Part shown: one piece after another, positions 34,796 through 62,897 of the stretch
Layout of the letters: each line of letters starts with the position of its first letter
How positions within the stretch are numbered: position 1 is the stretch's first letter
Virus record (IMG/VR): IMGVR_UViG_3300017917_002466
Coordinates: 124,001 to 188,000 of that record
DNA length: 64,000 nt
Reading direction: 5' to 3' (one strand)
Notes under the pieces: model-generated
What the model was told of the DNA's origin: nothing
The model's input: only the letters and a program-made list of their open reading frames with translations
Databases searched by the model: none
Made by a program: the position numbers and the translations under genes

Positions 34796-34990
34796 TATAA
34801 ATACATATAGAAGTTAAGAGACAGCGACTGATCCTCGTTTCTTTGCTTACCCAAAGATTATCTTAGCTTCCTCACTTAAACTCGGTAAGGAGTATCTTAT
34901 GCCAAGAAAATCCACTCGTGAAGAATTCATTACTAAAGCTAATCAAATCCACAATTTCAAATATGATTACTCCAATACAACGAATCAATT
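34796..34990 (+). pseudogene. leader RNA copy 3 plus N-terminal endonuclease remnant
   Basis: cttacc/ggtaag pseudoknot; ATG 34899 MPRKSTREEFITKANQIHNFKYDYS then homology lost. Confidence 0.75.
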
Positions 34991-35835
34991 ACGGAAACTT
35001 TGTCCCATCTATAACAGACTGTTTTTGTAATTCATCAATCTTAAACTGCGCTAACTTTCCTAGCTTTTCGTGTTTGATATAAAGGATGGCTCCCGTATCT
35101 GAAGCCATTATTTTTTCAAATCCATCCTTCTCGTCTTCGGTTAGAGTATCTCTGTAGATTTCTTTGTAGTGTTCGTCAACAACATGGCAATCAAACAACT
35201 TCACATCACCCAAAGTTGTTACCTGTAAAATTGGATTGATAAAGTACTTAAGCATCTTGAACAATTGGAGTAAAGTTGTCCTGAGTCCAAGAGAATCTTA
35301 AACAGTTTAAACAAGGAATTTGACCAGAATAACAATAAGGTTTTCCAGATGTTACCATTAGATAAAGCTGATATGAACCACAATTCTTACAATCATCACT
35401 CATATGCTGACCTCCTTTACATTTGGAACAATTTCTATCCTGTATGCATTCTCTATCTTCTATATTTTTCATCTAAGAAAAACATCGCCTCTTTTAAGTG
35501 AATCTATGATTTTAGATTCTTCTTCCTCTTTTGTCTTCTCCATCATTTTTTGAAAGTCTACTCTAGTTGATTTATCCGGTCTGTCACCACATTCTTGACA
35601 AGTCATTTTATTAGTAGTTACATCAACCGAGATATTAAAACTACCACATTTTTGACATTTATAAACACTGTTACAATCAACATCAAGTTCACCGTCTAAA
35701 AAAGGATTTGGTACTCCTTGTTTAGTAGTTGGTGAAATATTTTTTAATGTATTTTTACTTGGGATTAATTTATTTTTTTGTTTATATTCATTATATAGAT
35801 TTTCTAATTCTCCTTGCATAATTATTCCTCCTTTA

Positions 35836-36082
35836 TATAAATATATATATGAAGTTAGAAGACAGGGAGTAATTAACCTTTCTTTGCCAATCCAAAGATT
35901 ATTCTGACTTCCTTGTTGTGGCTCTAAAAAACATCTTCAAGCCCATCATATTAACAACTTCAGAGATTTCAAAGAACAAAGGCTTCTAGTCGAAAACGGT
36001 ATTACTTTGTGTCAAGAATGTCATAAATTAATTCATAAACAATTCGGTCGTTTAACTAATAGAAAAAACTTAAACGAATTTA
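35836..36082 (+). pseudogene. leader RNA copy 4 fused to HNH C-terminal remnant
   Basis: Leader breaks after P1; CCGSKKHLQAHH...NGITLCQECHKLIHKQFGRLT. Confidence 0.75.
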
Positions 36083-36826
36083 TGAATCTTCAATCTTCTT
36101 GAAAACATCTATTTCACAAATTTCATTTTCTTGATGTTGAAAAACTAAACGGTAATGATCTCTTATTTCTTTTTTGAGTTTTTCACTTCTTTCTCTATTA
36201 ACAACTGAAACTATTAAAGAATCTTTTCCATCTGATTGTTTAATCACTTGTTGAAATATTGGAAAGAAAAAAGAGTCCGTTGTCAAAGTATAAGGCTTCC
36301 AAATTTCATTTTTCATTCTTCTTTTTCCTTTTGTATTTTACCTTAATCTTTTTAAATTCTTTTTGACTTTTTTCAATTGACTTTTGCCCTTCTTGTACTA
36401 TTGAAATAATTATTTTATCTTCGAGATTGATGGGATGGTCTATCTCAATAGTACTTTGACTTTCTCTTACATATTCGTGTATTCCAGAAAAAGACTTTGT
36501 CCAAATGCTAAAACAGTATTCTTTCCAGATAACTTCATATCCTATTACTTTATCAATAAATTTTCTAACTTCTTTATTGTTATGAGTACGATTAAGAATT
36601 GCAGTCTTACCAGTGTCAGAACAAATCTTCTTTATTAAAGAAATATGATTAATATTAATAAAACTTTCATAGATAAAAGAGTTGTTAATATCAGTATAAT
36701 AATTTAATATCTTCAAAGGAATACTGTTATCAGCAACAGCAATAAAAGCCTTTGGAGCTTTACCGTATTTAATACAATAGACTGTAAGTTTCTTTTTCAT
36801 TTTTCTCATTTCTATTTATTATCTTA

Positions 36827-37486
36827 TTAAGATTTTCCATTGTCAATCCTCACAAACTTTTTTGAAAAATGATTATAGATAATACCCCATTTATTTTTAA
36901 GATGTTCTTTGACTTTAATTGGAAATCCTTTATAAATAAAAGCACATCTATTTAAAGAACAAGTTACCGATGACTTAAAATAATTCTTACAAAAATTAAA
37001 ATGTGGTTTAGAAATTAATTTTAAAAGATAAGGATTTGTAATATATAAAGTTTGAATTTCAGCAAGTTCATCGTGTATTTCATTATTACTATACTCGTTA
37101 AGATAAAGTCTTTGAATTGGAAATTTTTTAATATAATCTTGAATTATTGTTGGATAAATTTGATATTGAAGTAAGTGTGAAAATTCGTGAATAGTAATAC
37201 CAAAAAGAGTTATATCTTGAAGACTACCGGGACAATAAGGCTCTTCAAAATCTTGTTTTTCGACTTCGTTCTGATTCTTGCATATTAATGGATTAACAAA
37301 AATTCTATACTTTTGACCTTTCTCAAAAGGTTTATATAATCCTGCTTCTACACTAGAAAAATCATAAGCAATAGATAAGTTTATATTGATTTTATTTTTC
37401 TTTAAAAATTTTTCAATAAGAATTATTGCTGCTTGAGTATCATCGAGTGGAACGTCAACCTCAACCCAAATTTTCTTCTTTGTCAT
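36827..37486 (-). CDS. putative zinc metalloprotein
   Basis: IHEFSH and DELAE motifs. Confidence 0.55.
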   Translation of the reverse strand: MTKKKIWVEVDVPLDDTQAAIILIEKFLKKNKININLSIAYDFSSVEAGLYKPFEKGQKYRIFVNPLICKNQNEVEKQDFEEPYCPGSLQDITLFGITIHEFSHLLQYQIYPTIIQDYIKKFPIQRLYLNEYSNNEIHDELAEIQTLYITNPYLLKLISKPHFNFCKNYFKSSVTCSLNRCAFIYKGFPIKVKEHLKNKWGIIYNHFSKKFVRIDNGKS

Positions 37487-38198
37487 TTTCTTTTTCCTTG
37501 GCTATAACAATTAAAGAATTAATAATAATATTTTTGGGAATGATAGTATTTTCTTCTTTACTATTTTTTACCAGTAAAGAAGAAAGTCGATTTTCATTAG
37601 CTAATCTAAGATCATTTTCCCAAATATTAATTATGTTTTCTTTTTCTGATTCATCAAACCATTTTCCAATAAAAATAATATTTTGCGCCTGATTTAATTC
37701 AATTCGATACCTCATTAATAAACCTCCTTATAAATCTTAAAAATTTTTTATTTAGCATAATATCCAGCTAATAGTCTGTCCAAAAGAAGTTTAAAGTGTT
37801 GTAACGTACATCTTGGGCAAATGTTTGTGTTACAATGATTGTCGTCTGAGCATTCTTCGCCCCAAGGAATACTTGCAACCATTGGAGTATCACCACTAGA
37901 AGCTAGATTTATTTCTCTGTCTTTTGGAATTTTATGCTTTGGAGCGATCTTAGCGATTATCTCTGGCATATTCGCGTGAACAAACTTAAAGGAACCAAAG
38001 TCCTGCTGTTCCTTTAGCTGTGCAATCTTTTCTGTTATTGCTTCGGAGTCTTGAGTCTTCTTTTGAAGTTTGACTTTCAAGATTTCTAATTCTTCAATTA
38101 GCTTCTCCTGTTCTTCCTGAAGTTCCTTCATTTGTTTCATATCAATCTCCTGTTAAATATTCATTAATATTATATCATTTTTTCAAAAAGTTAAAAAA

Positions 38199-38858
38199 TT
38201 ATCTAAACTTACCAACATCTTTGTGACCGTGATTTAAATTAAGATTTCCAATTTCACAAATTTTTTGTACTCCAATTTGATAGTTATTTATGAAAATTTC
38301 ATATTGTCCTTTATATAAATTTAAAAAAGACTGAATTCCTTCTCTTGGATGTATCCACATACATCCATTTTCTTTATAAGTTTCAAATTCTTTGTGTGAA
38401 ATATAAAACCAATTGTCCTCAACCAACATATTAAAATCATCAAAAAGAAGTATTCCATTTTCTTTTAAAATTCTCCAAGATAAAATTGCGTCTTCTAATA
38501 CAGATGGTGCAAAATGGTCACCATCAATATATATCAAATCATACTTATTACCTCTAACATATTCCTCAAGTAAAGAAGAAAATGAATAATCGCACTTCCA
38601 TTTAAATCTACTAATGTCATTATCTTTTGACCATTCTTTAAAATTATGACTAAAGTTAGGCTCGTGTGCATTTGGATCAATTGTCGTTAGTTTACAATTT
38701 GGTAAATTTTCCAGAAGATAAAAAGTTGTTTTTCCTTCAAAAGTTCCAATTTCAAGTATTTCAGGACAAGTATTGTGTTTAAAATGACTTACTATCTTTT
38801 CAAAGTTTTTGTAATGAAAATCGTTCCAAAAGTCCATACTGAACTTATAATCTTTCAT
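38199..38858 (-). CDS. class I SAM-dependent methyltransferase (Methyltransf_24-like)
   Basis: LEIGTFEG, YDLIYIDGDH, GILLFDD. Confidence 0.85.
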   Translation of the reverse strand: MKDYKFSMDFWNDFHYKNFEKIVSHFKHNTCPEILEIGTFEGKTTFYLLENLPNCKLTTIDPNAHEPNFSHNFKEWSKDNDISRFKWKCDYSFSSLLEEYVRGNKYDLIYIDGDHFAPSVLEDAILSWRILKENGILLFDDFNMLVEDNWFYISHKEFETYKENGCMWIHPREGIQSFLNLYKGQYEIFINNYQIGVQKICEIGNLNLNHGHKDVGKFR

Positions 38859-39049
38859 ATTGCCTCGTTTTCAGAAATTTTTCTTCCATCTTCCTTCATC
38901 TTGCGATAGGCCCGACATTGTTGAACAGTGGCTGCAGAACCACTCTTTGAAGCATTCTTACACTTGCAGAATTCGTATTGACCCCATTTACAACAATATA
39001 TGCTTGGGCAATCATAATTATCCATATCAACCTCCTATTTTTATTATAA

Positions 39050-39171
39050 CATATTTATCAAAAAACGACAAAATTAAAAATAACTTTTGTAAACAAAATA
39101 ATATCACCCTTATAAAAATTACTTATAAAGATGATATTACAAATTATTTAAATATGTGCGTCATAAATTGA
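39050..39171 (+). pseudogene. DUF559-like endonuclease C-terminal remnant
   Basis: KNDKIKNNFCKQNNITLIKITY resembles QNDKTKAQYCFDNNIRLIVIPY of 12265..12957. Confidence 0.6.
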
Positions 39172-39663
39172 AAGAAGAGTATCATCGGGTAATCCTATCA
39201 ATGTAGTGTTGGACTTCAAGCCAATCCCAATAAGGCTTGGTATATGGAACAGGCTTAGTTAACTTTTTGGTCTCCATCTTTCTTCTCCTTCTTTACTTTC
39301 TTGTGCATTGAGTAAGAACCCCAACAAGTGCATCCTGCATATGGTACGCCGGGATTCTCTTTATGAAAATCACAGGTATGACTCTCAGTCCTACATTCGT
39401 AGTCGTCTGGGTTATAGTCTACTTGCATATGATTCAACCTCCCGTTCAAATTCAACAATAATAGAAATAAGTTGTTCCTTTGTCATGTTCTTATACTTTT
39501 CTTTTATCGGATGGCAAACTCCATATTCTTCTGGTACCAATCCCAATTGATCTTTGATGTAATTGTAAGTATGTTCGGGATGATCTATTGGTAAACAATC
39601 CCTACGATACATCATTCCGCCGTGACTCCACCATACAGGAATTTCAATTTCAGACTTCATATC

Positions 39664-40152
39664 CTAATCCTTCTTATAAGCCCTAAAAATACAACCCAAG
39701 TATTGTCTTACCTCTTGGAAAATCTTTGTTGACTCTTCTGGGTCTTTTCCGCGATTTCCGGCAACATTCAATATTACAATATTGTTTTTATCAATCCAAT
39801 CTGTGACATCAAAAATAAATGGTAAATCTTTTAAATCACATTCAAATGATAACTTATTATAAAATTGAATAGCTTTTTTAGTACAGATTGTTCCAGGTGA
39901 ATTAAAATCGTTTGCTATAAGAAGAGTTGCATCACTATCTTTTACATTACAGTATGTTCTTGGTGAATAGTTTGGAGAAGTATGCTCTATCAATCCGAGT
40001 TTGGCAAGAGATGGTCTGGGTCCATATACTGTTTTATATCCAAGAGGAGCAGTACCACCAGTAATTAACCCACAATCTCTAGCAGCAGCCAACGCAGCTA
40101 AATCAACTCCATATTGTCCACCACTGTAAATTGTTGTTAAAGTTTTTTTCAT
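39664..40152 (-). CDS. SLOG-family putative molybdenum carrier (YpsA-like) protein
   Basis: SGGQYGVD.AAL, RT..NVKDSDATL, LNVAGNR. Confidence 0.8.
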   Translation of the reverse strand: MKKTLTTIYSGGQYGVDLAALAAARDCGLITGGTAPLGYKTVYGPRPSLAKLGLIEHTSPNYSPRTYCNVKDSDATLLIANDFNSPGTICTKKAIQFYNKLSFECDLKDLPFIFDVTDWIDKNNIVILNVAGNRGKDPEESTKIFQEVRQYLGCIFRAYKKD

Positions 40153-40573
40153 ATGATTAATATACCATTTTGTTGTCAATCTGTCAATAGAAAACTATAA
40201 ACACCTAAAGATGATATTAAAATTAAACTTCAAAACAATCTTTTACCAATCTCATATAAATCTACCGAAAAACGCCGATGCATCAACCTAACAGTAAAGT
40301 ACTCTCTTAAAGTATGTCTGGCATTTTCATCTTCAAAAAAACTGTTCGTTGAAGGTCTGTCGCCGTGTTCTAAGAGTAAAGGATGTTTAATGTACAATAC
40401 ACACCATTTCAACTCAGCAGACTTTGTTACAATCATATCAATATTTGATATTATTTTTGGGTTGAGTCCACTTATCCATATCTTTTCAGAAAATATCAAA
40501 GTATCAAAGTCAACTCCGAACTGAATAGAATAAAATCCTTTCTTGGTGCTTCCGCGATCTATTATCAGTTTCA

Positions 40574-41320
40574 TTACTTCTTTGCGTTTACCAATTGTGC
40601 CTGAAACTCTGGCATCGCAGTAGTGTTATTTGAAAAACTTTGGTTCCTCAACTGAGTTATCTTATCAGGAGTCAGAAGACTTATTCCAAGTTTCTGCTCG
40701 TCATTCGTTCCCCATCCATTAGCGTCAATCTTTCCATACTTCTCATAGTATTCATCAACGCCAATTGTAAAGCTTTGCTTCGGTCTTACAATCCAATTCT
40801 TAATCCTTTCATACATTGAGTTACCATCAATGATAGTAACTGGGTCGTTCCTTGTCTCAAAATGCTCTTGGAGCATTAAAGCTAGCCCTTCAATCCGCAA
40901 TCCATATCCTTCGTACTGATGAATTGCTTCATTGACTCCATCACCCTTATTGTACAGTTCATCGGAAACTGGATTGTCTGTCCATATATGCCAAACGAAG
41001 TTATTAAAATACCTTGGGTTCCAATGATATTTTTGTGCAATATTTATTAGATTTACAAACTGGTCAACGTGTTGTTCAGGAGCATAAAAGAAAACATAAG
41101 CCTGGCTATTGTGGTGGGTTTTCGGTTCTTCTTCTTTCTCGTAAGAATATCCACAGCAAGAAAACTTCGGTATCATACCGATTCGGGCAAGTTCAAAGAC
41201 TAGCGGACGAATCGGTTTGTCAACGCATTCCCAAACTGTTCTCTTGTCTCTATCAGCGTTTATCTTTTTGAATCTTTTCTGAAAGGCTTTCCTCTGAATC
41301 GGCGTGACTCTGGACTCCAT
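40574..41320 (-). CDS. hypothetical protein
   Basis: VD..I.PLV..L...G..P.FSCCG motif; AAGGAG RBS before MESRV. Confidence 0.6.
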   Translation of the reverse strand: MESRVTPIQRKAFQKRFKKINADRDKRTVWECVDKPIRPLVFELARIGMIPKFSCCGYSYEKEEEPKTHHNSQAYVFFYAPEQHVDQFVNLINIAQKYHWNPRYFNNFVWHIWTDNPVSDELYNKGDGVNEAIHQYEGYGLRIEGLALMLQEHFETRNDPVTIIDGNSMYERIKNWIVRPKQSFTIGVDEYYEKYGKIDANGWGTNDEQKLGISLLTPDKITQLRNQSFSNNTTAMPEFQAQLVNAKK

Positions 41321-42460: not shown

Positions 42461-42565
42461 AAACCTCCAATAAATAAAATTAAACCGATGAGGTTCTTGT
42501 TATAATATACAAAATCCTATCTATAATATAATATTAGGAAACCGTTTTGTCAATAAAATTTTTTG

Positions 42566-43456: not shown

Positions 43457-43785
43457 TTTTTAATTCCTCTTTATCTTGATTAAAGTTTTCACATTTTTCT
43501 TTTAATAAATGTCCGCATTTTTCCCATTCAAAACAATTTTTACAACAAGAATTATTCCATTTTTCTCTTAAAGATGATGCACTTAGTTCAATCATTTCTA
43601 AAACAAATTTTTCACCTGGGTCTTTTCCTTTATTAATTCCATCAAAATATTTTGCATCATTCAAATATTTAATTTCTACTTTTATAAATCTTTGGTCTTT
43701 TTGAGACATTTTTGCTCCTTTTCATATAAATACTATATGAAGAAAAAATTAGGATAAACCCTAATCAAAAAGGAGTCAATTTTAA

Positions 43786-43899
43786 ATGAAAAATTATTCT
43801 ACATCTTTTATAAAAAGATCAAATATTATACATAAAAATAAGTATGAATATTCTGAAATTATTTATATTAATAATAAAACTAAAGTCAAAATATATTGA
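43786..43899 (+). pseudogene. N-terminal endonuclease remnant behind a TATAAATA promoter
   Basis: MKNYSTSFIKRSNIIHKNKYEYSEIIYINNKTKVKI; TATAAATA at about 43725; AAGGAG RBS. Confidence 0.6.
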
Positions 43900-43935
43900 A
43901 AATATTTTAATAAGTAAAATATTCTAAAGGCTTTA

Positions 43936-45240: not shown

Positions 45241-45279
45241 TTAGAATATTCTTTCTATCAAATATAATATATAAATAAC

Positions 45280-45370
45280 AAACAGAAGATGACATTATTA
45301 GACTAAATCATTTTACTAACTTAGAGTTATTGACAGTAGAAGATCACAAGAAAATACATTCTGGTGATCT
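45280..45370 (+). pseudogene. HNH endonuclease remnant
   Basis: TEDDIIRLNHFTNLELLTVEDHKKIHSG. Confidence 0.55.
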
Positions 45371-45382
45371 TCTACTAAACGA

Positions 45383-46648
45383 TTAGCCTTTTAGTAACTC
45401 ATCAATGTCAGGATCGTTGAAATGGTTTTCCTCATCCTCTTTCTCTTTCGGTGTTTTCCCGTGAATTAGGTCTATAAAATCATCCACTAATCCTTTGATA
45501 TTACTGGAAAGTAATTTATCGGGCCACGATTTGTGATTCTCGGTTGTTGCTTCACTGATGTAGTCATAAAAATCACAGCGAAGTTCATTGGGAAGGCACT
45601 TGAGATATTGGTACACATTAAATGCGTACTTATCGGCCTGTTTCTTTCCAGTGGGACTTTCCATCTCTCCAAAGTACTGTTCTTCTTCCTCTTCAAGATG
45701 AATTGATAATTCAAGGTTTAGTAACAAAATTTCTTGGTTGGAACATTTCTTGACTTTTTCTTCCAAATCTTTTGTCCAGTTTGTTACGATACTTCCAGGA
45801 TTTATCCCCTTCTTCTGTTCCTTGATGAAAGCATAGAAAGCCGAAGATGCACTTTCTCCAATGATTCCAGCCGAAATATCCCTAAGTGTAACAAAGTCTT
45901 CTTCGTTCAAAATCTTTGGATTCTTCTTGATGATATTGCTCATCCTTACCCAAGAACGTCGGGAAGGATAGACTACGCCCATCTTTCCGTTAGATGGAGG
46001 GTCAAGGTGCAATGCTCCGAACTTGGCAATGAATCCGATAACAAGCTTATGAACCTTTGCATCAATAGCCCAGTAAATCCATTCCTTGCGTGAAGGAGCG
46101 AACCCATAAACATTGAATCGGTCAAAAAGGGCTGGGTCAAGCTCGGTAACCTGATATCCAAACTTATCGTCAAGAGGATTGATTGCAGCGATGATTCGGG
46201 TGCAATCAGGAAGCTTCAATCCGTTGAGTTGACGGTTGAGAGCCATATCCATAATGCACTGATAGACCTCGGGCTTTCCTCGGTTGAACTCATCAAGGAA
46301 AAGAACGAGCTTGGTATTATTGTCTCTCGGCCACCATTTTGGTGGTGCGAATTCTGTTATTTTCTGTGAAACTTCTTTTCCATCATAAATGAAAGTAACT
46401 ATAGTTCGATCTGGCAAACCAATCAAATCACCAGCATCAGCCATCTGGCCAAGGAAAAGCATAATGACGGCATACCCACGCTTCTCAAAATAAGCCTTCA
46501 TAAACTCGGATTTGCCGATACCGTGAATACCAACGGCCATAATGGCTTGGTCTTCTGGAGTCATTTCAAGAATGTTTATCCAGTCTTTTGCCTCAAGCTC
46601 ACGAACCATATCCAAGGAACCGTTTGAACCACCTTCAATCTTGGACAT
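45383..46648 (-). CDS. MoxR-like AAA+ ATPase
   Basis: GIHGIGKS Walker A, LFLDEFNR Walker B, LDPALFDRF. Confidence 0.9.
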   Translation of the reverse strand: MSKIEGGSNGSLDMVRELEAKDWINILEMTPEDQAIMAVGIHGIGKSEFMKAYFEKRGYAVIMLFLGQMADAGDLIGLPDRTIVTFIYDGKEVSQKITEFAPPKWWPRDNNTKLVLFLDEFNRGKPEVYQCIMDMALNRQLNGLKLPDCTRIIAAINPLDDKFGYQVTELDPALFDRFNVYGFAPSRKEWIYWAIDAKVHKLVIGFIAKFGALHLDPPSNGKMGVVYPSRRSWVRMSNIIKKNPKILNEEDFVTLRDISAGIIGESASSAFYAFIKEQKKGINPGSIVTNWTKDLEEKVKKCSNQEILLLNLELSIHLEEEEEQYFGEMESPTGKKQADKYAFNVYQYLKCLPNELRCDFYDYISEATTENHKSWPDKLLSSNIKGLVDDFIDLIHGKTPKEKEDEENHFNDPDIDELLKG

Positions 46649-47339
46649 TATGAACCCCTTTCAATTGGTGTTACTTATGAAGCTCTTCGTCTATTTCTTC
46701 TTCGTACTCTTCATCTTCTTCAAGACTATCAAGGTCTATCTTTCTAAGGTAATCTTTTACCTTCTGTCTACTTTTCTTTTGAGACTTGCCGACTTTCTCC
46801 ATTCCATAGTTGTCAGCGTCATAATAGTTTTCACGGAAAGTCTTACTCATTTGATTAGGCTCCTTTTCCCTTTCTTACTCTTTTGAAAAAGCAACGAGTA
46901 CATTGCGTTAAATTGTTTGCATCAGCAGGCTGAATGAAATATTGGTTGCAGAATTTACAACGACAAATCTTCCCAGTCCACATAATGCGGATACGTTCAA
47001 AAATGTTATAGTGCTTTGGTATTGTTCCAAACAAAGAAAACTTCTTGAGCCAGCATTGTATTGGATTCTTGATTGATAATTCGTATTCATTGATTTCTTG
47101 GAAGACATTGCATTCTTTGACTTGGTCAAAAAGCATACTGAAGTGTTCAAAACTGCCATCCCCTTTATGTAAGAAGTGGCAAAAACCATTCTCTTGATGT
47201 GGTTTGTCTTTTTGAATTGACCAATATGGGCAAGTTCCATCACTATCCCAACAATATATTCCCTGTGGAATATTCTCAATTTTTCTTTCTTTCATACTTT
47301 CAATATACATCTGTTTGCGAAAAAGTCAAGTAGTAAAAT

Positions 47340-47476
47340 CATAAATATTTATAGAAGTTAAGAGACAGCGACTGATCCTCGTTTCTTTGCCAGTACAAAG
47401 ATTATCTTAACTTCATCTACACAAACCGTACTGGAGGTTCTATGATAGTTTCTAAAACAATTCTAATAAAAGAGTT
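47340..47476 (+). pseudogene. leader RNA copy 5 plus minimal HNH remnant
   Basis: ccagta/tactgg pseudoknot; ATG 47442 MIVSKTILIKEF resembles MILSKTV...IKDF ends of 24660..25343. Confidence 0.7.
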
Positions 47477-48051
47477 TATGAATTTATAACACGAAAAGCA
47501 TCAACAACAAATCTAATTTGATATTTACAATCGCTTATTGCGTTATGTTTCTGATCTTTGTCATCTGAATATTTACTTGTTGATATTTTTGAAAGCCAAG
47601 TTATTGTTCTACAATCAAATATATGCTTATAACTCCAAGGAGTTATAAGATTATATTCATTATAAGCTTGATTTAAAAGAGGAATATCAAAACCATTGCC
47701 CCAAACCTTAAAATTCTCTACAAGATTATTAGAACAAAAATCATTAAGTAAATTCAAACATTCCAATAAACTAATATTCCTATATGCTTCACTTTGTTCT
47801 TTTCTTACATTTTCGGGTTGGTTAAACCAAAATTTAATAGAACCCCATTCAATGTTTCTATTTGTTTGAGTTTCAATAATTGGATAAATTTCAAACTCTT
47901 TCCCCAATGTTCCATCTGTAATATTAAAACAAACTGCTCCAATACTTAAAACTACTGCATTCGTTTGAACTCCAAGAGTTTCAAGGTCTATCATAAGATG
48001 ATGTAGCTTCTTACTTTCTGCGGCCGGTACTGCGTTTATTTCTTCTGACAT
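47476..48051 (-). CDS. DEDD 3'-5' exonuclease (exonuclease VIII/Rv2179c-like)
   Basis: MIDLETLG, WGNG.D, DCRT, HNAISDC. Confidence 0.85.
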   Translation of the reverse strand: MSEEINAVPAAESKKLHHLMIDLETLGVQTNAVVLSIGAVCFNITDGTLGKEFEIYPIIETQTNRNIEWGSIKFWFNQPENVRKEQSEAYRNISLLECLNLLNDFCSNNLVENFKVWGNGFDIPLLNQAYNEYNLITPWSYKHIFDCRTITWLSKISTSKYSDDKDQKHNAISDCKYQIRFVVDAFRVINS

Positions 48052-48595
48052 CTGTAGTCCTTTCTCGGAGCGCGTCAAAGAATGCATCCTCGCCATAATC
48101 GTCGTCACAATCTTCTTTACAAACATTCGTTTTCTTTACCTTTACAGGCTTCTCTTTGGATTCAAGTTCCTTTATTCTATTTCTAAGCCTTTCTATTTCT
48201 TCCTCATATCGTGAAACATCTGAGTTAGCGTGACCAACAACGGTCTTTCCTTTCTCTACAATCACTGGCTTGAGGACTTGAAAATTATCGTGGAATGAAT
48301 TCTTATTCTCATTTATCATATCTAATCCTTTATGAAGTCCATCTTCTTGCTTCTACGTTTCAGTATCATCCATCCTGTGCGAATGACAGAGAATCCCATC
48401 ACAAGTACAGTCAATATTGCTATTGATAGTTTCACAATGATAAGAGCATTGCTGTCTTGGTCGTCTATCTCAATCATGTGTTACCTTCTTTATCTCTTTC
48501 AACACAATAGCATAAATAAAGACCATAAAAAAGTACCAAACCAATACCACCAACTATTACAATAACAAGAGAAGCTATTAACCATTGTGGCAATA

Positions 48596-53816: not shown

Positions 53817-53875
53817 ACAAACCTTCCTTTCTTATGATTATAATATACATCAAAGGAAAGAAAATGTCAAGAGGA

Positions 53876-56312: not shown

Positions 56313-56322
56313 ATTAAACCTT

Positions 56323-57489
56323 TTATATCTTATCTAAGCAACTTTTGAGATAATTAAAATAATCTTGATCTTCTGTCATAGACTTGGAAATATTATTGCT
56401 AAGTTTACAAACAGGTAGTCCATTAACAGAAATCTGCTTACAAACATTTTGTAGTGGCTCAAGTCCAAGATCATTAGATAAATAAGTTCCAATCCCGAAC
56501 ATAGTTTTTATTCTATGATTAAAACGAATAGCTAACTCAAACATCTTTGGAAAATCAAGTCCGTCAGAAAAAATCAATACCTTATTTTTTGGGTTAATTC
56601 CCAAAGCATTATAGTGATTTAGTACCATCTCACCCCAGACTATAGGATCACCAGAGTCGTGCCTCAAACCAGAACTTCTATTAGCAATATCTGGTGATAG
56701 ATCAAGTAACATTTTTTTATCACCTAACGTATCAGACAAAAGAATTCCTAAATCATTTCCATAAAAATCTAACCAAGTTTCAATCGCCATTTTCTGACTG
56801 TTCATAGGATGAGTAAAGGCTTGGAACAAAGTAAAAAACTCGTGTGCCATTGTGCCTATAGGTTTGATATTGAAACGCCTTGCCAAATCCACATCACTAG
56901 TTCCAATAATAACTCCATTATCAGCAAGATTTTTTGTTATGAACTCGTGCCATTCTGTAGTGTACGCTCTCCTACCCCCAAATTCTGCAATCAAAGGAGT
57001 ATAGCCATTCTTGCGTTCAAATTCTTTGAACATCGCAATTTTCTGAACAAGCCTATTTCTACCTTCAGAAATAAGATTATCATTAATAGGATTTACATTC
57101 CTACTATAAACCTCATGTACAATTTTCAAAACAAATATTTCAAATAGACTTACGTTTGTTAATGGTCCTTCCATTTCAATAGCCAAATTCCCATCTTTCT
57201 CACCAACATTAATATAATGCCTTTTGAGTCTGAAATCATCAAGATAGTTTATAAAACATTCACTAAAATAAGGAATAACAGCAAGATATTCAAGTTCATC
57301 ATTAGTAAAATTCAAATCACATAAACAGTCGATCTCATCTTCAATCTCTTTTTTAAATGGTAAGAGATTGATTCCGACATTTCTACACTTGAATTTATAC
57401 TTTGCTAATACATTAGGAAACTTCTGAAAAAAGATATTCAACATCGTCAGTTTGTAATAGTCTTGACTCAATAAACTTTTGATTATCAT
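56323..57489 (-). CDS. pncB: nicotinate phosphoribosyltransferase
   Basis: DYYKLTM, EFG.RR, GTMAHE, RHDSGDP, IFSDGL, FGIGT. Confidence 0.92.
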   Translation of the reverse strand: MIIKSLLSQDYYKLTMLNIFFQKFPNVLAKYKFKCRNVGINLLPFKKEIEDEIDCLCDLNFTNDELEYLAVIPYFSECFINYLDDFRLKRHYINVGEKDGNLAIEMEGPLTNVSLFEIFVLKIVHEVYSRNVNPINDNLISEGRNRLVQKIAMFKEFERKNGYTPLIAEFGGRRAYTTEWHEFITKNLADNGVIIGTSDVDLARRFNIKPIGTMAHEFFTLFQAFTHPMNSQKMAIETWLDFYGNDLGILLSDTLGDKKMLLDLSPDIANRSSGLRHDSGDPIVWGEMVLNHYNALGINPKNKVLIFSDGLDFPKMFELAIRFNHRIKTMFGIGTYLSNDLGLEPLQNVCKQISVNGLPVCKLSNNISKSMTEDQDYFNYLKSCLDKI

Positions 57490-58185
57490 TCAATTCCTCT
57501 TTCTTACTTCAATACACTTTCAATACGATTCTTTATTGCGGTCTTTAATTGAAGTTCCTTTTTATACATCTAATATAAATCAAGGTAAAGGATTTGTCAA
57601 GTTATTTCTTTCTTGCTTCTCTAAATTGTTTCAATTGTTCAAGCTTACCATTTAAAAACTTAGCTGGTAAAAAGAAAATATCTCCACACACTTGAAGAAA
57701 TTCCACAATAGGTTCAAGTGTTTCAATTGCAACAACAAGTTCTTTATCAGCAATTGCTTCACCAACACGAAGTCTATTCAAAACATCCGAAGTTGTTTGA
57801 TGTTCGGATTTCATCTATCCTCCCTTCCAAAAGTCTCCATCCAATATGTTAAAATTTTAATAGATTCTTTATTATTAACTTTAAACTTCTTTTCAATATA
57901 TGGAGCAGCTCCAAACATGTTAGTTTTACCTGACTCTCTTAATTCATCAAGAAAGTCAAGATGATCTTGAGTTACATAATCTGGTCTTGACATTTAATCA
58001 TTCTCCATTGGTAGTGATTCTACAATTAATTTTCTTCCCCACTTAATATCCAGTTCTTCAATAGTAAAAGCTCTTCCTTTATCAATTTCATTTAGTTGAT
58101 GTACAATTTTGATTTCATCATTATCAGCATAATGAATTTTAGCAGGAAAATTAATCATGACTTAGACTCCTTCGTTTAGAATAAT

Positions 58186-58554
58186 TTAAATTACCCTCAT
58201 ATAAAGAGTTTTGAAATACTTACCGTATTCAATACTATCGTCTATCATTAAATCAATATTTTGTTGCTTACAATATTTGGCTTTAGCATAGTTCCAATCT
58301 TCATTTTTGAAAAATGGATCATTAGGAGTCTTCCAATAAACTTCTTTACCTTGCGAAAGAAGATCGTCTGCTATGCTATAAAAATGAGTGTATTGAATTC
58401 CAAATTCTTTTAATTGAGATTCTATTTCAGGAGTTCTTTGCGAACCAGTTATAATGTAAACATTATGACCTTGTTCAATCAACCTTTTAGTAAAGGTTGT
58501 AAAAAACTTTGGCTTTGCATCAATTGTGTTATGTATGTCTACTCCGAACCGCAT
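58186..58554 (-). CDS. HAD-superfamily hydrolase-like protein
   Basis: FGVDIHNTI, IITG, IDLMIDD. Confidence 0.65.
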   Translation of the reverse strand: MRFGVDIHNTIDAKPKFFTTFTKRLIEQGHNVYIITGSQRTPEIESQLKEFGIQYTHFYSIADDLLSQGKEVYWKTPNDPFFKNEDWNYAKAKYCKQQNIDLMIDDSIEYGKYFKTLYMRVI

Positions 58555-59818
58555 AACAACTTTAAGCCTTTCTAAACCAATCCCACAAATAGTTCTTTCC
58601 CTTAAACTCTGGCTGGAGACTAAAGCTGTCTATTGTATTGTACTCTCCGTACACATCAACCCAATCCCCTCGGAACCCTTTGATTTTGTAGGTCTTGTTT
58701 TTGAAGAAAGCACATCCGACTGGGTCAGAAATTTCTGGAACATCTCGTTCTGCAAGGAGAAAATCATTTGGAACAATTACCTCAAAGCATTCCATAAACG
58801 TATCCTTTCTATGTAACTAATATAATATCTGTGAAAGGATTTGTCAATGGTTATTTGAAATATTCATAACCATTTGTGCCAAAGCTCCAATATCATCTGA
58901 AATAAAATCAAGGGCTTTAGAAAGTTCTCTTCTTGTTACCATTTTATCTGGACTTCTTTTCATCTTTTCTACAAAGCTATCCCAATCTTTTTGTCTAAGT
59001 TCAGAATCTTTATTTTCCGTTTTCATAGTAAACTTCATTCCACTTCTGATTCTTCTTTCTTGATATTGAACTTTTTGCCTTTCACGCTATTGCCGTGAAC
59101 GCATTCGTGTTCAATGTTGTTGGGCTTTGAACCTTGACACCAACGATAGTTCTTAGTGTAGGGAGCATAAACTGGACATTCACAACACTTCATAGAAACC
59201 TCCTATTCTGAAATTATATCAAACTGGTCACCGATTTTATTCAAAGTATTGGCAAGTTGTTTGGCCAAAGACTTTAGCCATTCCTCAGACCTACCATTCA
59301 TTACCCTGTCTTGTTCTTCTTCTGATAAGTCTTCAAAGACAACATTAGCATACTTCTTGGTATCTTCGTTCAAAGTCCTGAAATAAATGCCCGAAAGTTT
59401 TCTACGTTCTTTAGCCATTTTCTAATCTCCTTTATCTGTTTCATTAAGGATTCTATTAGCCCTACGTTTAACATTACCCGGCTTCTTATACATCATTTTC
59501 AAATAATCTTCAGCAGAAATTGAAGCACTCGAGACAGTAGGACGATAAGTACCAGAAACTGTTCTACCATCCATCGTAGTTGCTGTCAAAGGATTAAAGC
59601 CATTGTCATACATTCTATTATAATGATCTACTTCTTTCCTTATATCTTCAATGTAGTCTGTATTCTTCTTAGCCTTCTCAATCACTACTTTCATTGTAGG
59701 AGTTACTGTTTTCGGTGGCCTTGGCTTAGGCTTCGGAAGCATTGCCTTGATTGTTTTCAATTCTTCAAGAAGATTCTTGAAAGTTGAATCAAGGAAATCA
59801 ACATACTTCAAGTAAAGC

Positions 59819-60427
59819 TTAATCATATAATTCACCTTCAATTTTAAAAAAATTTCTACCAATAAAAGAATTAAAAATTAACCAAGCTTTTGCACTTATT
59901 TTATTATTTGGATTTTCTAAAATTTCTTGAACTTTATTTTTGTCGGCTATAATAATTTCTATTTCTTCACTTGATTCATTATTTTTATTTGAGATTTCTC
60001 CTTCAGCTTCACAAAAAACAATTGAAATTGATTCATCTGAAAGACCCGCGCTGTTTATAATAAATGGACTTATATGTTTTATTTTTGTCACATTTAGTCC
60101 AACTTCTTCAAAAAATTCCCTACGAGCAGCTTCTTCAATACTTTCATTTTTGTCAATTAATCCTGCTGGCAGAGAAAATTCATAATCCTGAAGTGGAACT
60201 CGGAACTCTTTGATAACTACAAGCCTCAAATCTCTTTGATATCCTGCACCAACTGGCATTGTAATCCATCCCTTATCAACAACAGCCGCAATATAAACTG
60301 CCTTCATTCCGTTTGGTCTAGAACACCAAGTCCAATAATTTGTTTGATTTTTTTTATTAAGATATTCAGTTGCAAGTAAATCAAGAAATTGTGTTTTAAT
60401 TAGTGGTTTAGTTCTCAATATTTTCAT
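59819..60427 (-). CDS. NUDIX hydrolase (ADP-ribose pyrophosphatase-like)
   Basis: PAGLIDKNESIEEAARREFFEEVG Nudix box; EFRVP; SAGLSDE. Confidence 0.9.
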   Translation of the reverse strand: MKILRTKPLIKTQFLDLLATEYLNKKNQTNYWTWCSRPNGMKAVYIAAVVDKGWITMPVGAGYQRDLRLVVIKEFRVPLQDYEFSLPAGLIDKNESIEEAARREFFEEVGLNVTKIKHISPFIINSAGLSDESISIVFCEAEGEISNKNNESSEEIEIIIADKNKVQEILENPNNKISAKAWLIFNSFIGRNFFKIEGELYD

Positions 60428-61004
60428 AAAGCTTTTCCTTTTTAATAAAACGTACAATTTTTTTATTTGTCAATGCAGTAGCACAATTAAAATTACCCCG
60501 ACTCAAAAGCTTTCTTATATAAGTAGAACTACATTCACAATTTTTTATAAGCAACATTTGATGTGGCTTAATTAAATACCAAGTTTCAAGATGTTGTTCG
60601 ATATAATCGCCTCTTTCAAAAATAATAAATGGAACTGATTGTATTAATGATTCATAATTAGCCCAAGTATTAATATGGTCTGCACAGTCCCTTCCTATAA
60701 TAACACTAAAATTATATTTTTCAAACATAAAACGAAGAATAGCTATCATATCATACATACGACCACTTATATTCATTTCTTCATATCGCTTAACCTTAAT
60801 ACGACCAAATAAACTAGGAAATATTAATTTACACATTTTAATTCTATGTTCAAAAGATACTTGATTATTTTTATGTGGATGGTTATAAGTAGGAAGTACC
60901 CAAACTTCATTAACAAGATTCTTTTCCAAACAAGCTTTTACAATTGCTAGATGTGAAATGTGGGGTGGATTAAAAGAACCCCCTAGTATTCCGATCTTTT
61001 TCAT
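60408..61004 (-). CDS. nadD: nicotinate-nucleotide adenylyltransferase
   Basis: GGSFNPPH..H, IIG.D, SSTYIR. Confidence 0.9.
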   Translation of the reverse strand: MKKIGILGGSFNPPHISHLAIVKACLEKNLVNEVWVLPTYNHPHKNNQVSFEHRIKMCKLIFPSLFGRIKVKRYEEMNISGRMYDMIAILRFMFEKYNFSVIIGRDCADHINTWANYESLIQSVPFIIFERGDYIEQHLETWYLIKPHQMLLIKNCECSSTYIRKLLSRGNFNCATALTNKKIVRFIKKEKLYENIEN

Positions 61005-61012
61005 ATTATTCT

Positions 61013-61321
61013 TTACGGAAGAATGATACCACTCTTAGTCTTATTACCAACTGTTCCTGGTTTTCCACCCGTAATTACTGATACAATCTGCTGAAAGTTA
61101 TGGTTCAGAGCATCCATATTATGCATCATCGTTACTGACATTTGAGCCAAACCTTCAATGTTTCCAGAAACGAACTCAACAACTTCCAAGAGTTCGGACT
61201 TGGTAACAGTTGCATCAGGATTATCTTTCAAATCCTGAACAAAAGCATCCCACTTAGCTTTGCGGGCTTCGTATTCTTTCTTCATTTCCTCTTTGGTCAT
61301 TTCCTTCTGTGGCTGTTCCAT
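61013..61321 (-). CDS. hypothetical protein, paralog of 58844..59038
   Basis: WD.FV......PD..VT..EL....F.S..I..LAQM shared. Confidence 0.65.
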   Translation of the reverse strand: MEQPQKEMTKEEMKKEYEARKAKWDAFVQDLKDNPDATVTKSELLEVVEFVSGNIEGLAQMSVTMMHNMDALNHNFQQIVSVITGGKPGTVGNKTKSGIILP

Positions 61322-61344
61322 TTTAGCTTCTTGGTATGATGATT

Positions 61345-62127
61345 TTATGTCTTATTAAGTTTACAGATTGGTGGCATATTCATTTTATGAAAACTATTAT
61401 TATGTCTCTTAACATAAATTGTTAAAATTTCTTTTTGTCTATCTGTTAATTCTATAAACATTCTTTCATAAACTTTTACTGGCAAATATGAATACTTTTC
61501 ATAATATTCCATTGCCCATTCAAGTTCAGGATAAGTTGCACCTATCTGATCTTCATCCGAACGATCATCTTCCCATAATCCGTCTGTAGGTTTTGCTTCA
61601 ACAATCTCTTTATTAATATCAAAATGTTTAGACAAATCCCATACTTCAGTCTTCAATAAATCACCAATTGGACTAATATCAACTCCACCATCTCCATACT
61701 TTGTAAAAAAACCTACACCAAAATCTTCAACTTTATTTCCAGTACCAGCTACAACATACCCATAACTATTAGCAAAGTTATACAAAGTCACCATTCTTAA
61801 ACGCGATCTGGCATTTACTAAAGCTAAATCTGAAATTGCATCAAATGGAATACTTTTTTTCCATACTTCAAAAGTTTCCGTCAAATCAACCTCAAAAGAA
61901 GTAACATTCGTAAAATTCCTTTTCAACCAATTCATATGGTTATGGGCTCTATCTAAATGAGATTTTGGTTGATGAATTGGCATTGAAACAACAATAACGG
62001 GTTTTTTAGTTTTAGCACAAAGAGTACTAACTAATGCAGAGTCAACCCCACCACTAATACCAATAACAAAACCATTGTAACTCTGTAGCCAATTAACAAT
62101 TTGTTTTTCAACTTTAATGCAGTCCAT
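61345..62127 (-). CDS. nadE: NH3-dependent NAD+ synthetase
   Basis: GISGGVDS, N.RSRLRM, GTGNK.E, GFFTKYGDG, PTDGLW. Confidence 0.93.
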   Translation of the reverse strand: MDCIKVEKQIVNWLQSYNGFVIGISGGVDSALVSTLCAKTKKPVIVVSMPIHQPKSHLDRAHNHMNWLKRNFTNVTSFEVDLTETFEVWKKSIPFDAISDLALVNARSRLRMVTLYNFANSYGYVVAGTGNKVEDFGVGFFTKYGDGGVDISPIGDLLKTEVWDLSKHFDINKEIVEAKPTDGLWEDDRSDEDQIGATYPELEWAMEYYEKYSYLPVKVYERMFIELTDRQKEILTIYVKRHNNSFHKMNMPPICKLNKT

Positions 62128-62144
62128 AACACTTTATTTTCGTA

Positions 62145-62675
62145 TTAAAGTTTTGCTACTGCAAAGTGCGCTCCAGCAGCGCGCATTTCTTTGATTGCTA
62201 CTTCGGTAGTTTCTGGAGCAACCCCAGCAATTGCATTCTCAAAGACGTAAGTCTTAATCCCAAGTTTACAAAGACCAAGAACAGCCGCCTTCACACAGTA
62301 GTCAGTGGCAACTCCAGCGATCCAAGCATCAGTAATCTTATTCTTTTTCAACCAATCTACAATCTCCTTGCTTCCAAGTTCTGGATGAAAAACATCATAA
62401 GTCTTTTTATTAAAAACCACTGCTTTATTAGCGGCACATTCTATTATACTAGCTTGTCCGCTGGTTTCTGTTATACAATGAGGTGGAAAAATCTTAAACT
62501 CTGGATCGTTGACATCGTGACAGTCCATTGTCTTGATAAGAAGAATATTGTCTTCTTTAACCATTTCTGTAATTTTGGCAAGAACTGGCCTAATTTTATC
62601 GGTATTCGGAACAGCCAGTGTTCCACCAAAAAAGAAATCATTTTGACAATCAACTAGAACAATTACCTTTTTCAT
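62145..62675 (-). CDS. pncA: nicotinamidase
   Basis: VDCQNDF..GGTLAV, PPHC, GVATDYCV. Confidence 0.9.
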   Translation of the reverse strand: MKKVIVLVDCQNDFFFGGTLAVPNTDKIRPVLAKITEMVKEDNILLIKTMDCHDVNDPEFKIFPPHCITETSGQASIIECAANKAVVFNKKTYDVFHPELGSKEIVDWLKKNKITDAWIAGVATDYCVKAAVLGLCKLGIKTYVFENAIAGVAPETTEVAIKEMRAAGAHFAVAKL

Positions 62676-62741
62676 ACTATATACTCCTTTGTTGAGTTCA
62701 CAATAATATAATATCTTGTAACAAGTTTGTCAAGGACAATC

Positions 62742-62897
62742 TATAAATACCTTTAGAAGTTGGGAGACAAGGGCCGTACACCTTTTTCTTGCCAATCCAA
62801 GAATTACCTCAACTTCCTTACTTATACCTGATTGGAGAGCTATTGTCATAAAGATATTCATAAAAGATTTAGTAAATTTACAACAGAAGAATACTTA
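62742..62897 (+). pseudogene. leader RNA copy 6 fused to HNH C-terminal remnant
   Basis: ccaatc/gattgg pseudoknot; CHKDIHKRFSKFTTEE. Confidence 0.7.

What the first reader, a model, noticed from the sequence alone, without database searches (positions are those of the whole stretch)
34796..62897. Internally deleted endonuclease elements that keep the leader RNA and gene ends
Seen: leader + N-terminus only (34796-34990); leader fused to HNH C-terminus (35836-36082, 62742-62897); leader + about 12 codons resembling both ends of the HNH gene (47340-47476). Leaderless scraps occur at 13093, 39050, 43786 and 45280. Leader pairing is intact in these copies although the ORF is gone. Inference: either repeated clean deletion of toxic nucleases, or the RNA module is retained or mobile on its own, like a non-autonomous element.
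Basis: partly seen in the sequence, partly recalled or inferred. Interest (0 to 1): 0.6.

Follow-up and report, generated by a model that had tools for sequence, protein, structure and literature searches.

The report
Decayed homing-endonuclease cassettes with conserved RNA leader
A T4-like giant phage from a pond carries many selfish nuclease genes that all start with the same folded RNA leader, which hides the ribosome-binding site; several copies have recently lost the nuclease gene but still keep the leader, which looks like ordinary gene decay, while the leader itself appears to be an undescribed RNA element.

Summary
The window has 7 leader copies, 3 before intact endonuclease genes and 4 before stubs (34796, 35836, 47340, 62742). 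It also has 4 leaderless scraps. The whole 253.7-kb T4-like genome has 17 leaders, 7 without a working gene.

One correction: the stub at 34796 belongs to a zinc-finger (DUF4379-type) endonuclease, not HNH.

The leader is a real structure. It is a three-way junction with invariant GACAG, UUU and AUUA, and 18 of 19 pairs show compensatory changes in 53 copies. Its third loop pairs perfectly (5-7 bp, 32 different sequences) with the bases running into the Shine-Dalgarno. That target is itself the loop of a small hairpin, so the ribosome site is buried. Rfam has no match.

The same leader precedes HNH, GIY-YIG, LAGLIDADG, DUF4379-type and DUF7487 nuclease genes in other uncultured phages.

Related contigs carry full-length genes at the 47340 and 62742 sites and empty sites at 34796 and 35836. 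Every deletion junction differs. The stubs are as undecayed as the leaders. Elsewhere 33 of 33 leaders with a complete downstream reading frame have a full gene.

So these are young, independent deletions of homing-endonuclease cassettes. Evidence for a self-mobile or separately selected RNA module is lacking. Transcription could not be tested.

The parts
12164..12957 (+). Intact cassette: TATAAATA, leader (12164-12252), buried SD, and a DUF4379-type endonuclease gene (12265-12957, 230 aa).
   Evidence: CM 71.5 bits; Pfam DUF4379, PHROG 559/9084.
13049..13186 (+). Leaderless HNH C-terminal scrap lying just after the intact cassette. This suggests one nuclease gene replaced another behind the same leader.
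   Evidence: tblastn E 8e-5 to residues 182-226 of the HNH gene; sequence read.
24559..25343 (+). Intact cassette: CATAAATA, leader (24559-24647), and an HNH+NUMOD3 endonuclease gene (24660-25343, 227 aa).
   Evidence: CM 74.4 bits; Pfam HNH and NUMOD3.
34796..34977 (+). ORF-less copy: promoter, leader (34796-34883), kissing-loop target GGTAAG and SD, ATG at 34900, and about 26 N-terminal codons of a DUF4379-type endonuclease. The rest of the gene is deleted.
   Evidence: CM 89.9 bits, 19 of 19 pairs; 90% identical to the leader of the full-length L092 gene; relatives have an empty site.
34759..34787 (-). Divergent sigma-70-type early promoter of the neighbouring gene. Its -35 box lies 9 nt from the cassette's TATAAATA. 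The same arrangement is seen at 24559, 47340 and 62742.
   Evidence: 11 of 12 match; repeat family D8.
35836..36102 (+). ORF-less copy: promoter and leader (35836-35924) joined about 4 nt after P1 to 62 in-frame C-terminal HNH codons (35914-36102). The SD, its hairpin and the start codon are deleted. The last 23 nt overlap the 3' end of the convergent gene 36080..36316.
   Evidence: CM 81.1 bits, 18 of 19 pairs; 70% aa identity to the intact HNH at genome 189404; in relatives the two flanking genes abut.
39055..39160 (+). Leaderless C-terminal scrap of a DUF4379-type endonuclease.
   Evidence: tblastn E 5e-5; sequence read; relatives have the flanking genes adjacent.
43725..43899 (+). TATAAATA, the first bases of P1 (GAAG), a short unstructured leader, an SD and 37 N-terminal codons of a DUF4379-type gene. 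The three-way junction is absent.
   Evidence: The same site in relatives holds leader+HNH (L068), leader+DUF4379-type (L050), or is empty (L052).
45270..45386 (+). TATAAATA joined after about 10 nt to a 32-codon C-terminus of an HNH-type gene. No three-way junction.
   Evidence: Read by eye. The same site in L052 holds leader plus a 258-aa DUF4379-type gene.
47340..47489 (+). Mini copy: CATAAATA, leader (47340-47428), kissing target and SD, and a 15-codon ORF (47442-47489) made of 9 N-terminal and 6 C-terminal HNH codons. The last 14 nt encode, on the other strand, the C-terminal tail and stop of gene 47476..48126.
   Evidence: CM 93.1 bits, 19 of 19 pairs; a full allele (leader plus 213-aa HNH) lies between the same two genes in L075.
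62742..62912 (+). ORF-less copy: promoter, leader (62742-62829), kissing target GATTGG, a mutated SD and hairpin strand, and about 22 C-terminal HNH codons (62844-62912). The last 18 nt overlap gene 62895..63176. It is the only copy of 53 with a changed invariant junction base (GACAA).
   Evidence: CM 82.4 bits, 18 of 19 pairs; full alleles in L073 (233 aa) and L044 next to the ortholog of 62145..62675.
63553..64000 (+). Intact cassette: TATAAATA, leader (63553-63640), and a DUF4379-type endonuclease gene starting at 63657. It runs off the window and is 249 aa in the genome.
   Evidence: CM 81.7 bits.

Best explanation
The elements are free-standing homing-endonuclease cassettes of a T4-like jumbo phage, at different stages of the usual invade-decay-lose cycle.

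A complete cassette has four parts:
1. A T4-type late promoter (TATAAATA).
2. A leader of about 65 nt that starts about 6 nt downstream, where T4-type late transcripts begin (inferred). It folds into a three-way junction (P1, P2, P3) with invariant junction bases.
3. A small hairpin, P4. Its loop pairs with the loop of P3, and its 3' strand is the rest of the Shine-Dalgarno, so the ribosome site is buried.
4. A nuclease gene of any of several families.

The leader most likely acts in cis as a portable translational silencer, and possibly also as a 5'-end stabiliser. It would keep nuclease synthesis very low wherever the cassette lands. The fold is shown; the effect on translation is inferred.

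The four ORF-less copies in the window, and three elsewhere in the genome, arose by separate recent deletions inside such cassettes.
- The 3' gene ends survive because the convergent neighbour gene now uses those 14-23 nt for its own C-terminus and stop.
- The promoter end abuts the neighbour's early promoter or ribosome site.
- The leader in between survives because the deletions are young. Copying from other leader copies may also help.
For: Structure:
- 93.9% of cells are paired, against 46-52% when the partners are slid.
- 18 of 19 pairs show compensatory changes in 53 copies (for the 17 own copies).
- G-U outnumbers A-C 30 to 12, which favours the sense RNA.
- GACAG, UUU and AUUA are invariant.

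Kissing loop:
- All 51 copies that still have an SD region show 5-7 contiguous Watson-Crick pairs between the P3 loop and the bases ending in the first GG of the SD.
- There are 32 distinct target sequences.
- Mean helix length is 6.31 against 3.97 +/- 0.13 when loops and tails are permuted, 0 of 20000 permutations reaching it.
- The flanking P4 stem is at least 3 bp in 90% of copies, against 17.5% of control windows.

Gene families behind the leader: HNH/NUMOD3, GIY-YIG, LAGLIDADG, DUF4379-type and DUF7487.

T4-like genome: a gp23 capsid gene at E 8e-87.

Alleles at the same sites in relatives:
- Full: L075, L073, L044, L052, L068, L050, L011/L091, L058.
- Empty: L017-L025, L052, L055.

Independence and youth of the deletions:
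- All junctions differ.
- The 62-codon stub at 35914 is open and keeps the HNH motif residues.
- The ORF-less state was seen in no relative.

Leaders elsewhere: 33 of 33 with a complete downstream reading frame have a full gene, against 10 of 17 here. My Fisher test on these counts gives p about 2e-4.

Overlaps with neighbour genes.
Against: - No RNA data exist, so the promoter, the transcript start and the repression are all inferred.
- In four copies the upstream deletion end lies between the end of the junction and codon 9 (35836, 62742, 47340 and genome 27179). None cuts into the junction. That is somewhat more orderly than random deletion predicts.
- However, the stubs at 43725 and 45270 do seem to have lost the junction while keeping the promoter.
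- Seven decayed copies in one genome is unusually many, and this is not explained.
- How a fully buried ribosome site is ever opened is unknown.
Confidence: 0.7

Rival explanations
1. The promoter-leader module is kept by selection after the gene is lost because it does something on its own. It might make a late antisense or small RNA against the convergent early gene. It might drive a downstream gene where it is co-oriented (genome 23254). Or it might insulate neighbouring transcription units.
For: - All 7 ORF-less copies keep the complete promoter and junction with 15-19 of 19 pairs, no worse than the intact copies.
- Four upstream deletion ends stop just past the junction.
- In the window the leaders point against the surrounding early genes.
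- No intrinsic terminator follows the mini copies.
Against: - The coding stubs are equally undecayed, so there is no differential conservation.
- The leader's fold targets its own SD.
- Leaders elsewhere essentially always have a gene.
- Two stubs kept the promoter but lost the junction.
- 62742 shows the first signs of decay: a changed invariant G and a mutated P4/SD strand.
Confidence: 0.13
2. The ORF-less copies are non-autonomous mobile elements that spread as short units, mobilised in trans by intact nucleases (MITE-like, or by trans-homing).
For: - Relatives have cleanly empty sites at 34796 and 35836, so these stubs could in principle have arrived already deleted.
- Trans-homing of a defunct endonuclease is known in T4, where mobE mobilises I-TevIII (PMC2790892; its title and abstract were listed).
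Against: - No two ORF-less copies share a junction or a gene family combination.
- No short derivative was found among 36 metagenomic leaders. The one candidate, L086, is a chimeric contig.
- Full-length alleles occupy the very same sites in relatives.
Confidence: 0.05
3. Leader copies are kept uniform by recombination or gene conversion among the 17 copies. ORF-less leaders would then stay intact without selection on them. The leader would also serve as a shared 5' homology arm for swapping nuclease genes.
For: - The same P2 hairpin sequence is shared by copies with different P1 and different gene families: 34796, 47340 and genome 112519; 35836 with genome 27179 and 189303; 62742 with the GIY-YIG copy at genome 66684.
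- Different families sit behind a leader at one site in relatives (L068 against L050).
- An HNH scrap follows the intact DUF4379-type cassette at 12164.
Against: - No conversion tract was mapped.
- Shared P2 types also occur between distant phages, which fits horizontal spread of whole cassettes equally well.
- This is a contributing process, not an alternative to decay.
Confidence: 0.2
4. The junction is a riboswitch-like sensor, or the binding site of a universal factor, that opens or locks the buried SD in response to a signal and so times nuclease synthesis.
For: - Invariant junction bases with freely covarying stems, and an SD-sequestering tertiary contact, are typical of riboswitch aptamers.
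- The motif occurs both in a pond T4-like phage and in phage-like DNA binned with Lachnospiraceae. A phage-specific protein partner is therefore unlikely.
Against: - The downstream genes have no shared metabolic theme.
- No alternative, mutually exclusive fold was found.
- No ligand is suggested.
- There is no match to any Rfam riboswitch or ribozyme even at E up to 10.
Confidence: 0.2

Closest known systems
Regulation of phage T4-family homing endonuclease genes (I-TevI, I-TevII, I-TevIII, segB, Aeh1 mobE): late promoters plus RNA hairpins that sequester the ribosome-binding site (Edgell, Gibb and Belfort 2010, PMC2988022, read)
   Same: - T4-like phage.
- Selfish nuclease genes with their own TATAAATA late promoter.
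- A ribosome site hidden in RNA structure.
- Neighbouring host-gene signals embedded in the element that favour its retention.
   Different: - In T4 each gene has its own simple hairpin, and the late promoter lies inside it, so late transcripts escape repression.
- Here one conserved three-way junction with a kissing loop is shared by at least five nuclease families and several phages.
- Here the promoter lies upstream of the whole structure, so late transcripts contain it.
Homing-endonuclease life cycle of invasion, fixation, degeneration, loss and re-invasion (Goddard and Burt 1999; cited from my own knowledge)
   Same: Full, empty and degenerate alleles occur at the same sites among relatives. 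The deletions are independent. Different nucleases re-occupy one site.
   Different: Here the stages are seen for free-standing phage cassettes that carry a common RNA leader.
PeSL mobile promoter/stem-loop cassettes of T4-type phages (Arbiol et al. 2010; cited from my own knowledge)
   Same: A short promoter-plus-structure module is repeated in many intergenic sites of a T4-type genome and is associated with shuffling of gene cassettes.
   Different: PeSLs are early promoters with a terminator-like stem-loop and no translational role. This module is a late promoter with a junction that pairs with the SD, and it is tied to nuclease genes.
Riboswitches whose pseudoknot hides the SD, such as SAM-II, preQ1 and guanidine-III (from my own knowledge)
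   Same: A compact aptamer-like fold with invariant junction bases and a tertiary pairing that covers the SD.
   Different: No ligand, no metabolic gene association, no Rfam match.
GIR1 lariat-capping ribozyme upstream of endonuclease genes in twin-ribozyme introns (from my own knowledge)
   Same: A dedicated structured RNA sits at the 5' end of a homing-endonuclease mRNA.
   Different: GIR1 is eukaryotic, intron-borne and catalytic. Nothing here indicates catalysis.

Membership tests
Free-standing homing endonuclease cassette | Encodes a nuclease of a recognised homing-endonuclease family. | tested here: met
   HNH+NUMOD3, GIY-YIG, LAGLIDADG, and PHROG homing-endonuclease families.
Free-standing homing endonuclease cassette | Lies between genes and is present or absent among related genomes at the same site. 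| tested here: met
   Full, empty and deleted alleles were found.
Free-standing homing endonuclease cassette | Cleaves a target near its insertion site and spreads by repair. | not testable with these tools
   Needs enzyme assays or phage crosses.
T4-type RBS-sequestering hairpin control | The Shine-Dalgarno is base-paired in a conserved structure. | tested here: met
   The loop-loop helix and the P4 stem cover the SD in 51 of 51 copies.
T4-type RBS-sequestering hairpin control | The late promoter sits inside the structure, so late transcripts cannot form it. | tested here: not met
   TATAAATA ends about 6 nt before P1, so the whole structure is downstream of it.
Riboswitch | A conserved aptamer with covarying stems and invariant junction bases, linked to an expression platform. 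| tested here: met
Riboswitch | Binds a small ligand, and the downstream genes share a related function. | tested here: inconclusive
   The downstream genes are selfish nucleases with no metabolic theme. Ligand binding cannot be tested here.
Known Rfam families, including self-cleaving ribozymes | Match to a curated covariance model. | tested here: not met
   No hit at gathering score in the window. No hit on any leader at E up to 10.
Non-autonomous mobile element (MITE-like) | Several copies of the same short derivative at different sites. | tested here: not met
   All junctions differ. No short derivatives were found elsewhere.
PeSL-like mobile regulatory cassette | A promoter plus structured element repeated at many intergenic sites, with signs of recombination between copies. 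| tested here: inconclusive
   There are 17 copies and mosaic P2 types, but no recombination event was mapped.

The most novel reading that the evidence does not exclude
The leader is a new class of structured regulatory RNA dedicated to selfish nuclease genes. It would be a signal-responsive switch (riboswitch-like or factor-binding) that opens the buried ribosome site only at the right moment of infection. On this reading the ORF-less copies persist because their late RNAs still do something, for example as antisense RNAs or decoys.
Probability: 0.12. Interest if true: 0.85.

Novelty: new variant of a known kind. Interest (0 to 1): 0.6.

Why it matters
Decay of homing-endonuclease genes is expected and ordinary. 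The surprise lies underneath it.

Unrelated nuclease families (HNH, GIY-YIG, LAGLIDADG and others), in phages with apparently very different hosts, share one portable RNA leader. Its covariation is exceptionally clean, and it physically hides the ribosome-binding site.

This points to a common, transferable solution to the problem every selfish nuclease faces: being expressed just enough wherever it lands. It is a compact, well-defined RNA that can be tested directly in reporter and structure-probing experiments.

The leader also works as a sensitive marker for finding endonuclease cassettes and their remnants in phage metagenomes.

Tried and rejected
- Megablast and blastn of the region and of the leader against GenBank phages found nothing, or only chance hits.
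- Peptide-pattern searches of IMG/VR with the HNH alignment and with a flanking protein gave one weak locus without a leader, and none.
- Cultured phages with homologous HNH genes lack the leader: a Raoultella T4-like phage, Vibrio D184 and a faecal phage.
- No RNA sequencing run holds the phage. Only its source pond metagenome does. Laying contigs on 58001-64000 showed only the source assembly and gave no alternative alleles.
- In the prokaryote genome scan, 35 of 37 pattern hits were chance matches.
- L086 first looked like an ORF-less leader in another phage. It is 98% identical to L039 up to the SD and then switches to bacterial genes, so I treat it as a chimeric contig.
- A hammerhead or other known ribozyme core was considered and rejected. 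The junction bases differ and Rfam gives no hit.
- A terminator role for the leader was not supported by the simple scan.
- Junction microhomology could not be established. The available full alleles are too diverged (74-78% in the coding ends) and the DNA is A+T-rich.
- The large protein-representative search, structure prediction and complex prediction were not needed. No alternative genetic code was used.

Full report
**Context**

The window is bases 124001-188000 of a 253,664-bp virus record with direct terminal repeats. The record was assembled from a pond metagenome. It encodes a T4-type major capsid protein (Pfam Gp23, E 8e-87), so reading TATAAATA as a T4-type late promoter is reasonable. 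That reading still rests on knowledge of T4, not on a test. Most genes in the window lie on the minus strand behind sigma-70-like early promoters. No close relative exists among GenBank phages.

**The observation**

A covariance model built from the repeated leader finds 7 copies in the window and 17 in the genome. All are full-length matches.

In the window, three copies precede intact genes:
- 12164: DUF4379-type, 230 aa.
- 24559: HNH+NUMOD3, 227 aa.
- 63553: DUF4379-type, 249 aa.

- 34796: start codon plus about 26 N-terminal codons.
- 35836: 62 C-terminal HNH codons fused about 4 nt after the leader's closing helix.
- 47340: a 15-codon ORF of 9 N-terminal and 6 C-terminal HNH codons.
- 62742: about 22 C-terminal HNH codons behind a degenerate SD.

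The N-terminus at 34796 is not HNH. With its leader, it is 90% identical to the start of a full-length 312-aa DUF4379-type gene in L092.

The four leaderless scraps are also real. Two of them, at 43725 and 45270, still carry the TATAAATA box but have no junction.

Elsewhere in the genome three more leaders have decayed genes:
- 23254: a 26-codon stub.
- 27179: the C-terminus of another HNH type.
- 54571: a frameshifted, truncated GIY-YIG gene.

Six intact endonuclease genes have no such leader.

**What the leader is**

About 6 nt after TATAAATA begins a three-way junction. It runs P1 (10 bp), GACAG, P2 (3-5 bp, variable), UUU, P3 (6 bp), AUUA, then the P1 3' strand.

- On the 17 genome copies, 90% of cells pair against 44-49% when the partners are slid. 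Seventeen of 19 pairs show compensatory changes.
- On 53 copies from this genome and other contigs, the figures are 93.9% against 46-52%, and 18 of 19 pairs. That alignment was fitted to the model.
- G-U pairs outnumber A-C mismatches 30 to 12, which points to RNA of the gene's sense.
- GACA, UUU and AUUA are invariant in 53 of 53 copies. The final G of GACAG is present in 52 of 53.

The decisive feature came from the sequences downstream of P1.
- In every one of the 51 copies that still has an SD region, the P3 loop is a perfect Watson-Crick complement (5-7 bp) of the bases that end in the first GG of the SD.
- There are 32 different target sequences. In the Lachnospiraceae-associated group the loop carries CUCCU and covers the whole AGGAG.
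- Pairing each loop with other copies' tails gives a mean helix of 3.97 +/- 0.13, against 6.31 observed. None of 20000 permutations reached the observed value.
- The target is flanked by a short stem, P4. It has the form (N)CCU...AGG(N') in the pond group and is 6 bp in the other group. It is at least 3 bp in 90% of copies, against 17.5% of control windows.

The structure is therefore a kissing loop between P3 and P4 that buries the entire SD. No Rfam family matches, even at E up to 10.

**Distribution**

A pattern scan of IMG/VR gave 6 contigs with the leader. A metagenome scan gave 36 true leaders among 80 loci. A scan of 185,579 prokaryote genomes gave two, both in contigs binned as Lachnospiraceae, with phage-like neighbours.

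The genes behind the leader are of several kinds:
- HNH;
- GIY-YIG, two subtypes;
- LAGLIDADG with HTH domains;
- DUF4379-type, including a chimera with an HNH C-terminus;
- DUF7487;
- a His-Me/EndoVII-like protein.

The Lachnospiraceae-associated copies lack TATAAATA, so the fold does not depend on the T4-type promoter. Of the 36 metagenomic leaders:
- 33 have complete ORFs of 213-336 aa.
- 2 have ORFs that run off their contig.
- 1 (L086) has only a 9-codon ORF, but that contig is chimeric.

**Orthologous loci**

- Empty alleles. Five contigs syntenic with 33.9-43.7 kb have no leader anywhere. The genes flanking 35836 abut in them. The region corresponding to 34796 has only a short spacer.
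- Full alleles. L075 has leader plus a 213-aa HNH between the orthologs of 46855..47310 and 47476..48126, which is the site of the 15-codon mini copy. L073 (233 aa) and L044 have leader plus HNH next to the ortholog of 62145..62675, the site of 62742. L011/L091 has a 289-aa DUF7487 gene where this genome has the 26-codon stub at 23254. L058 has a 257-aa GIY-YIG gene at the site of 54571.
- Scrap sites. At the 43725 site, relatives hold leader+HNH (L068), leader+DUF4379-type (L050), or nothing (L052). At 45270, L052 holds leader plus a DUF4379-type gene.

So one intergenic site cycles through empty, occupied by different families, and decayed. No relative shares any ORF-less allele of this genome.

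**Why leaders and gene ends remain**

- The 3' ends are explained by the sequence itself. The last 23, 14 and 18 nt of the stubs at 35836, 47340 and 62742 overlap the 3' end of the convergent neighbour gene. At 47340 the stub encodes that gene's C-terminal tail and stop. In L075 the two genes overlap by only 2 nt.
- At the 5' end, TATAAATA lies 9-20 nt from the neighbour's early -35 box or ribosome site.
- The junction itself is not covered by any such signal. Its survival is best explained by youth. The 62-codon stub at 35914 is still open and keeps the HNH motif residues. The 26-codon stub at 34900 keeps its family motif.
- The ORF-less leaders pair as well as the intact ones: 19, 19, 18, 18, 17, 18 and 15 pairs against 19, 18, 17, 16, 18, 19, 17, 17, 17 and 14.
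- Only 62742 shows incipient decay. It has the single change of an invariant junction base among 53 copies, and a mutated P4/SD strand.
- Ascertainment matters too. Remnants that lost the junction are found only as scraps, and at least four exist.
- Leaders in general evolve more slowly than the coding starts: 90% against 74%, and 81% against 78%. They are also mosaic. P2 types are shared across copies with different P1 and different gene families. Recombination between copies may therefore help keep them uniform.

**What remains open**

- Four upstream deletion ends fall in the short stretch between the junction and codon 9, which is tidier than chance.
- Seven decayed copies of 17 here, against 0 of 33 elsewhere, is a significant excess (p about 2e-4 by my Fisher test). 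The metagenomic copies are not independent samples, though.
- No transcription data exist. Laying contigs gave nothing beyond the source assembly.
- How the buried SD is ever opened is unknown. Leaky translation may suffice for a nuclease that needs only a few molecules. A signal-responsive switch is possible but unsupported.

**Verdict**

Its first reading, repeated deletion, is supported. Its second, an RNA module retained or mobile on its own, is not.

The ORF-less elements are an ordinary stage of the homing-endonuclease cycle. The shared leader is a well-supported RNA element, apparently undescribed, and is the part worth following up.

Noticed in passing
window 26700-34400, and also 4800-8000: G+C is 0.44-0.48 against about 0.3 around it, with many dispersed repeats (families D12-D20). 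There is no ORF over 136 aa. The stretch is a dense array of roughly 25 minus-strand ORFs of 75-100 aa, which look like a paralogous small-protein family. No tRNAs.
   Followed up: partly
window 1100-17900, 53822, 57552, 58799: About 22 copies of a conserved minus-strand early-promoter module (TTGACA, 17 nt, TATATT, with conserved flanks) each precede a small gene. This resembles the PeSL promoter cassettes of T4-type phages.
   Followed up: no
genome 68840-68986 (outside the window): A second, short match to the N-terminus of the gp23 capsid family (46.5 bits) lies in a 130-aa frame between two GIY-YIG cassettes, at 66684 and 69583. It may be a fragment duplicated by homing.
   Followed up: no
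genome 27096-27179, just downstream of the gp23 capsid gene (27387-28415, minus strand): A leader with a decayed HNH gene sits directly after the major capsid gene. This recalls the position of segD between genes 23 and 24 in T4.
   Followed up: no
L086 against L039: This metagenome contig is 98% identical to a phage contig for 2.9 kb up to the leader's SD. It then continues into bacterial genes (an enolase fragment and a PduL-like gene). It is probably an assembly chimera, less likely a phage-host junction.
   Followed up: partly
L068 and L050, against window 43710-43935; also window 12164-13186: Different nuclease families sit behind the leader at the same intergenic site in relatives. In the window an HNH C-terminal scrap follows an intact DUF4379-type cassette. 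This suggests gene swapping behind a shared leader.
   Followed up: partly
genome 51407, 59767, 205837 and 194784: Three intact DUF4379-type genes and one pseudogene have TATAAATA and a short unstructured leader instead of the junction. The junction is therefore optional for this family.
   Followed up: partly
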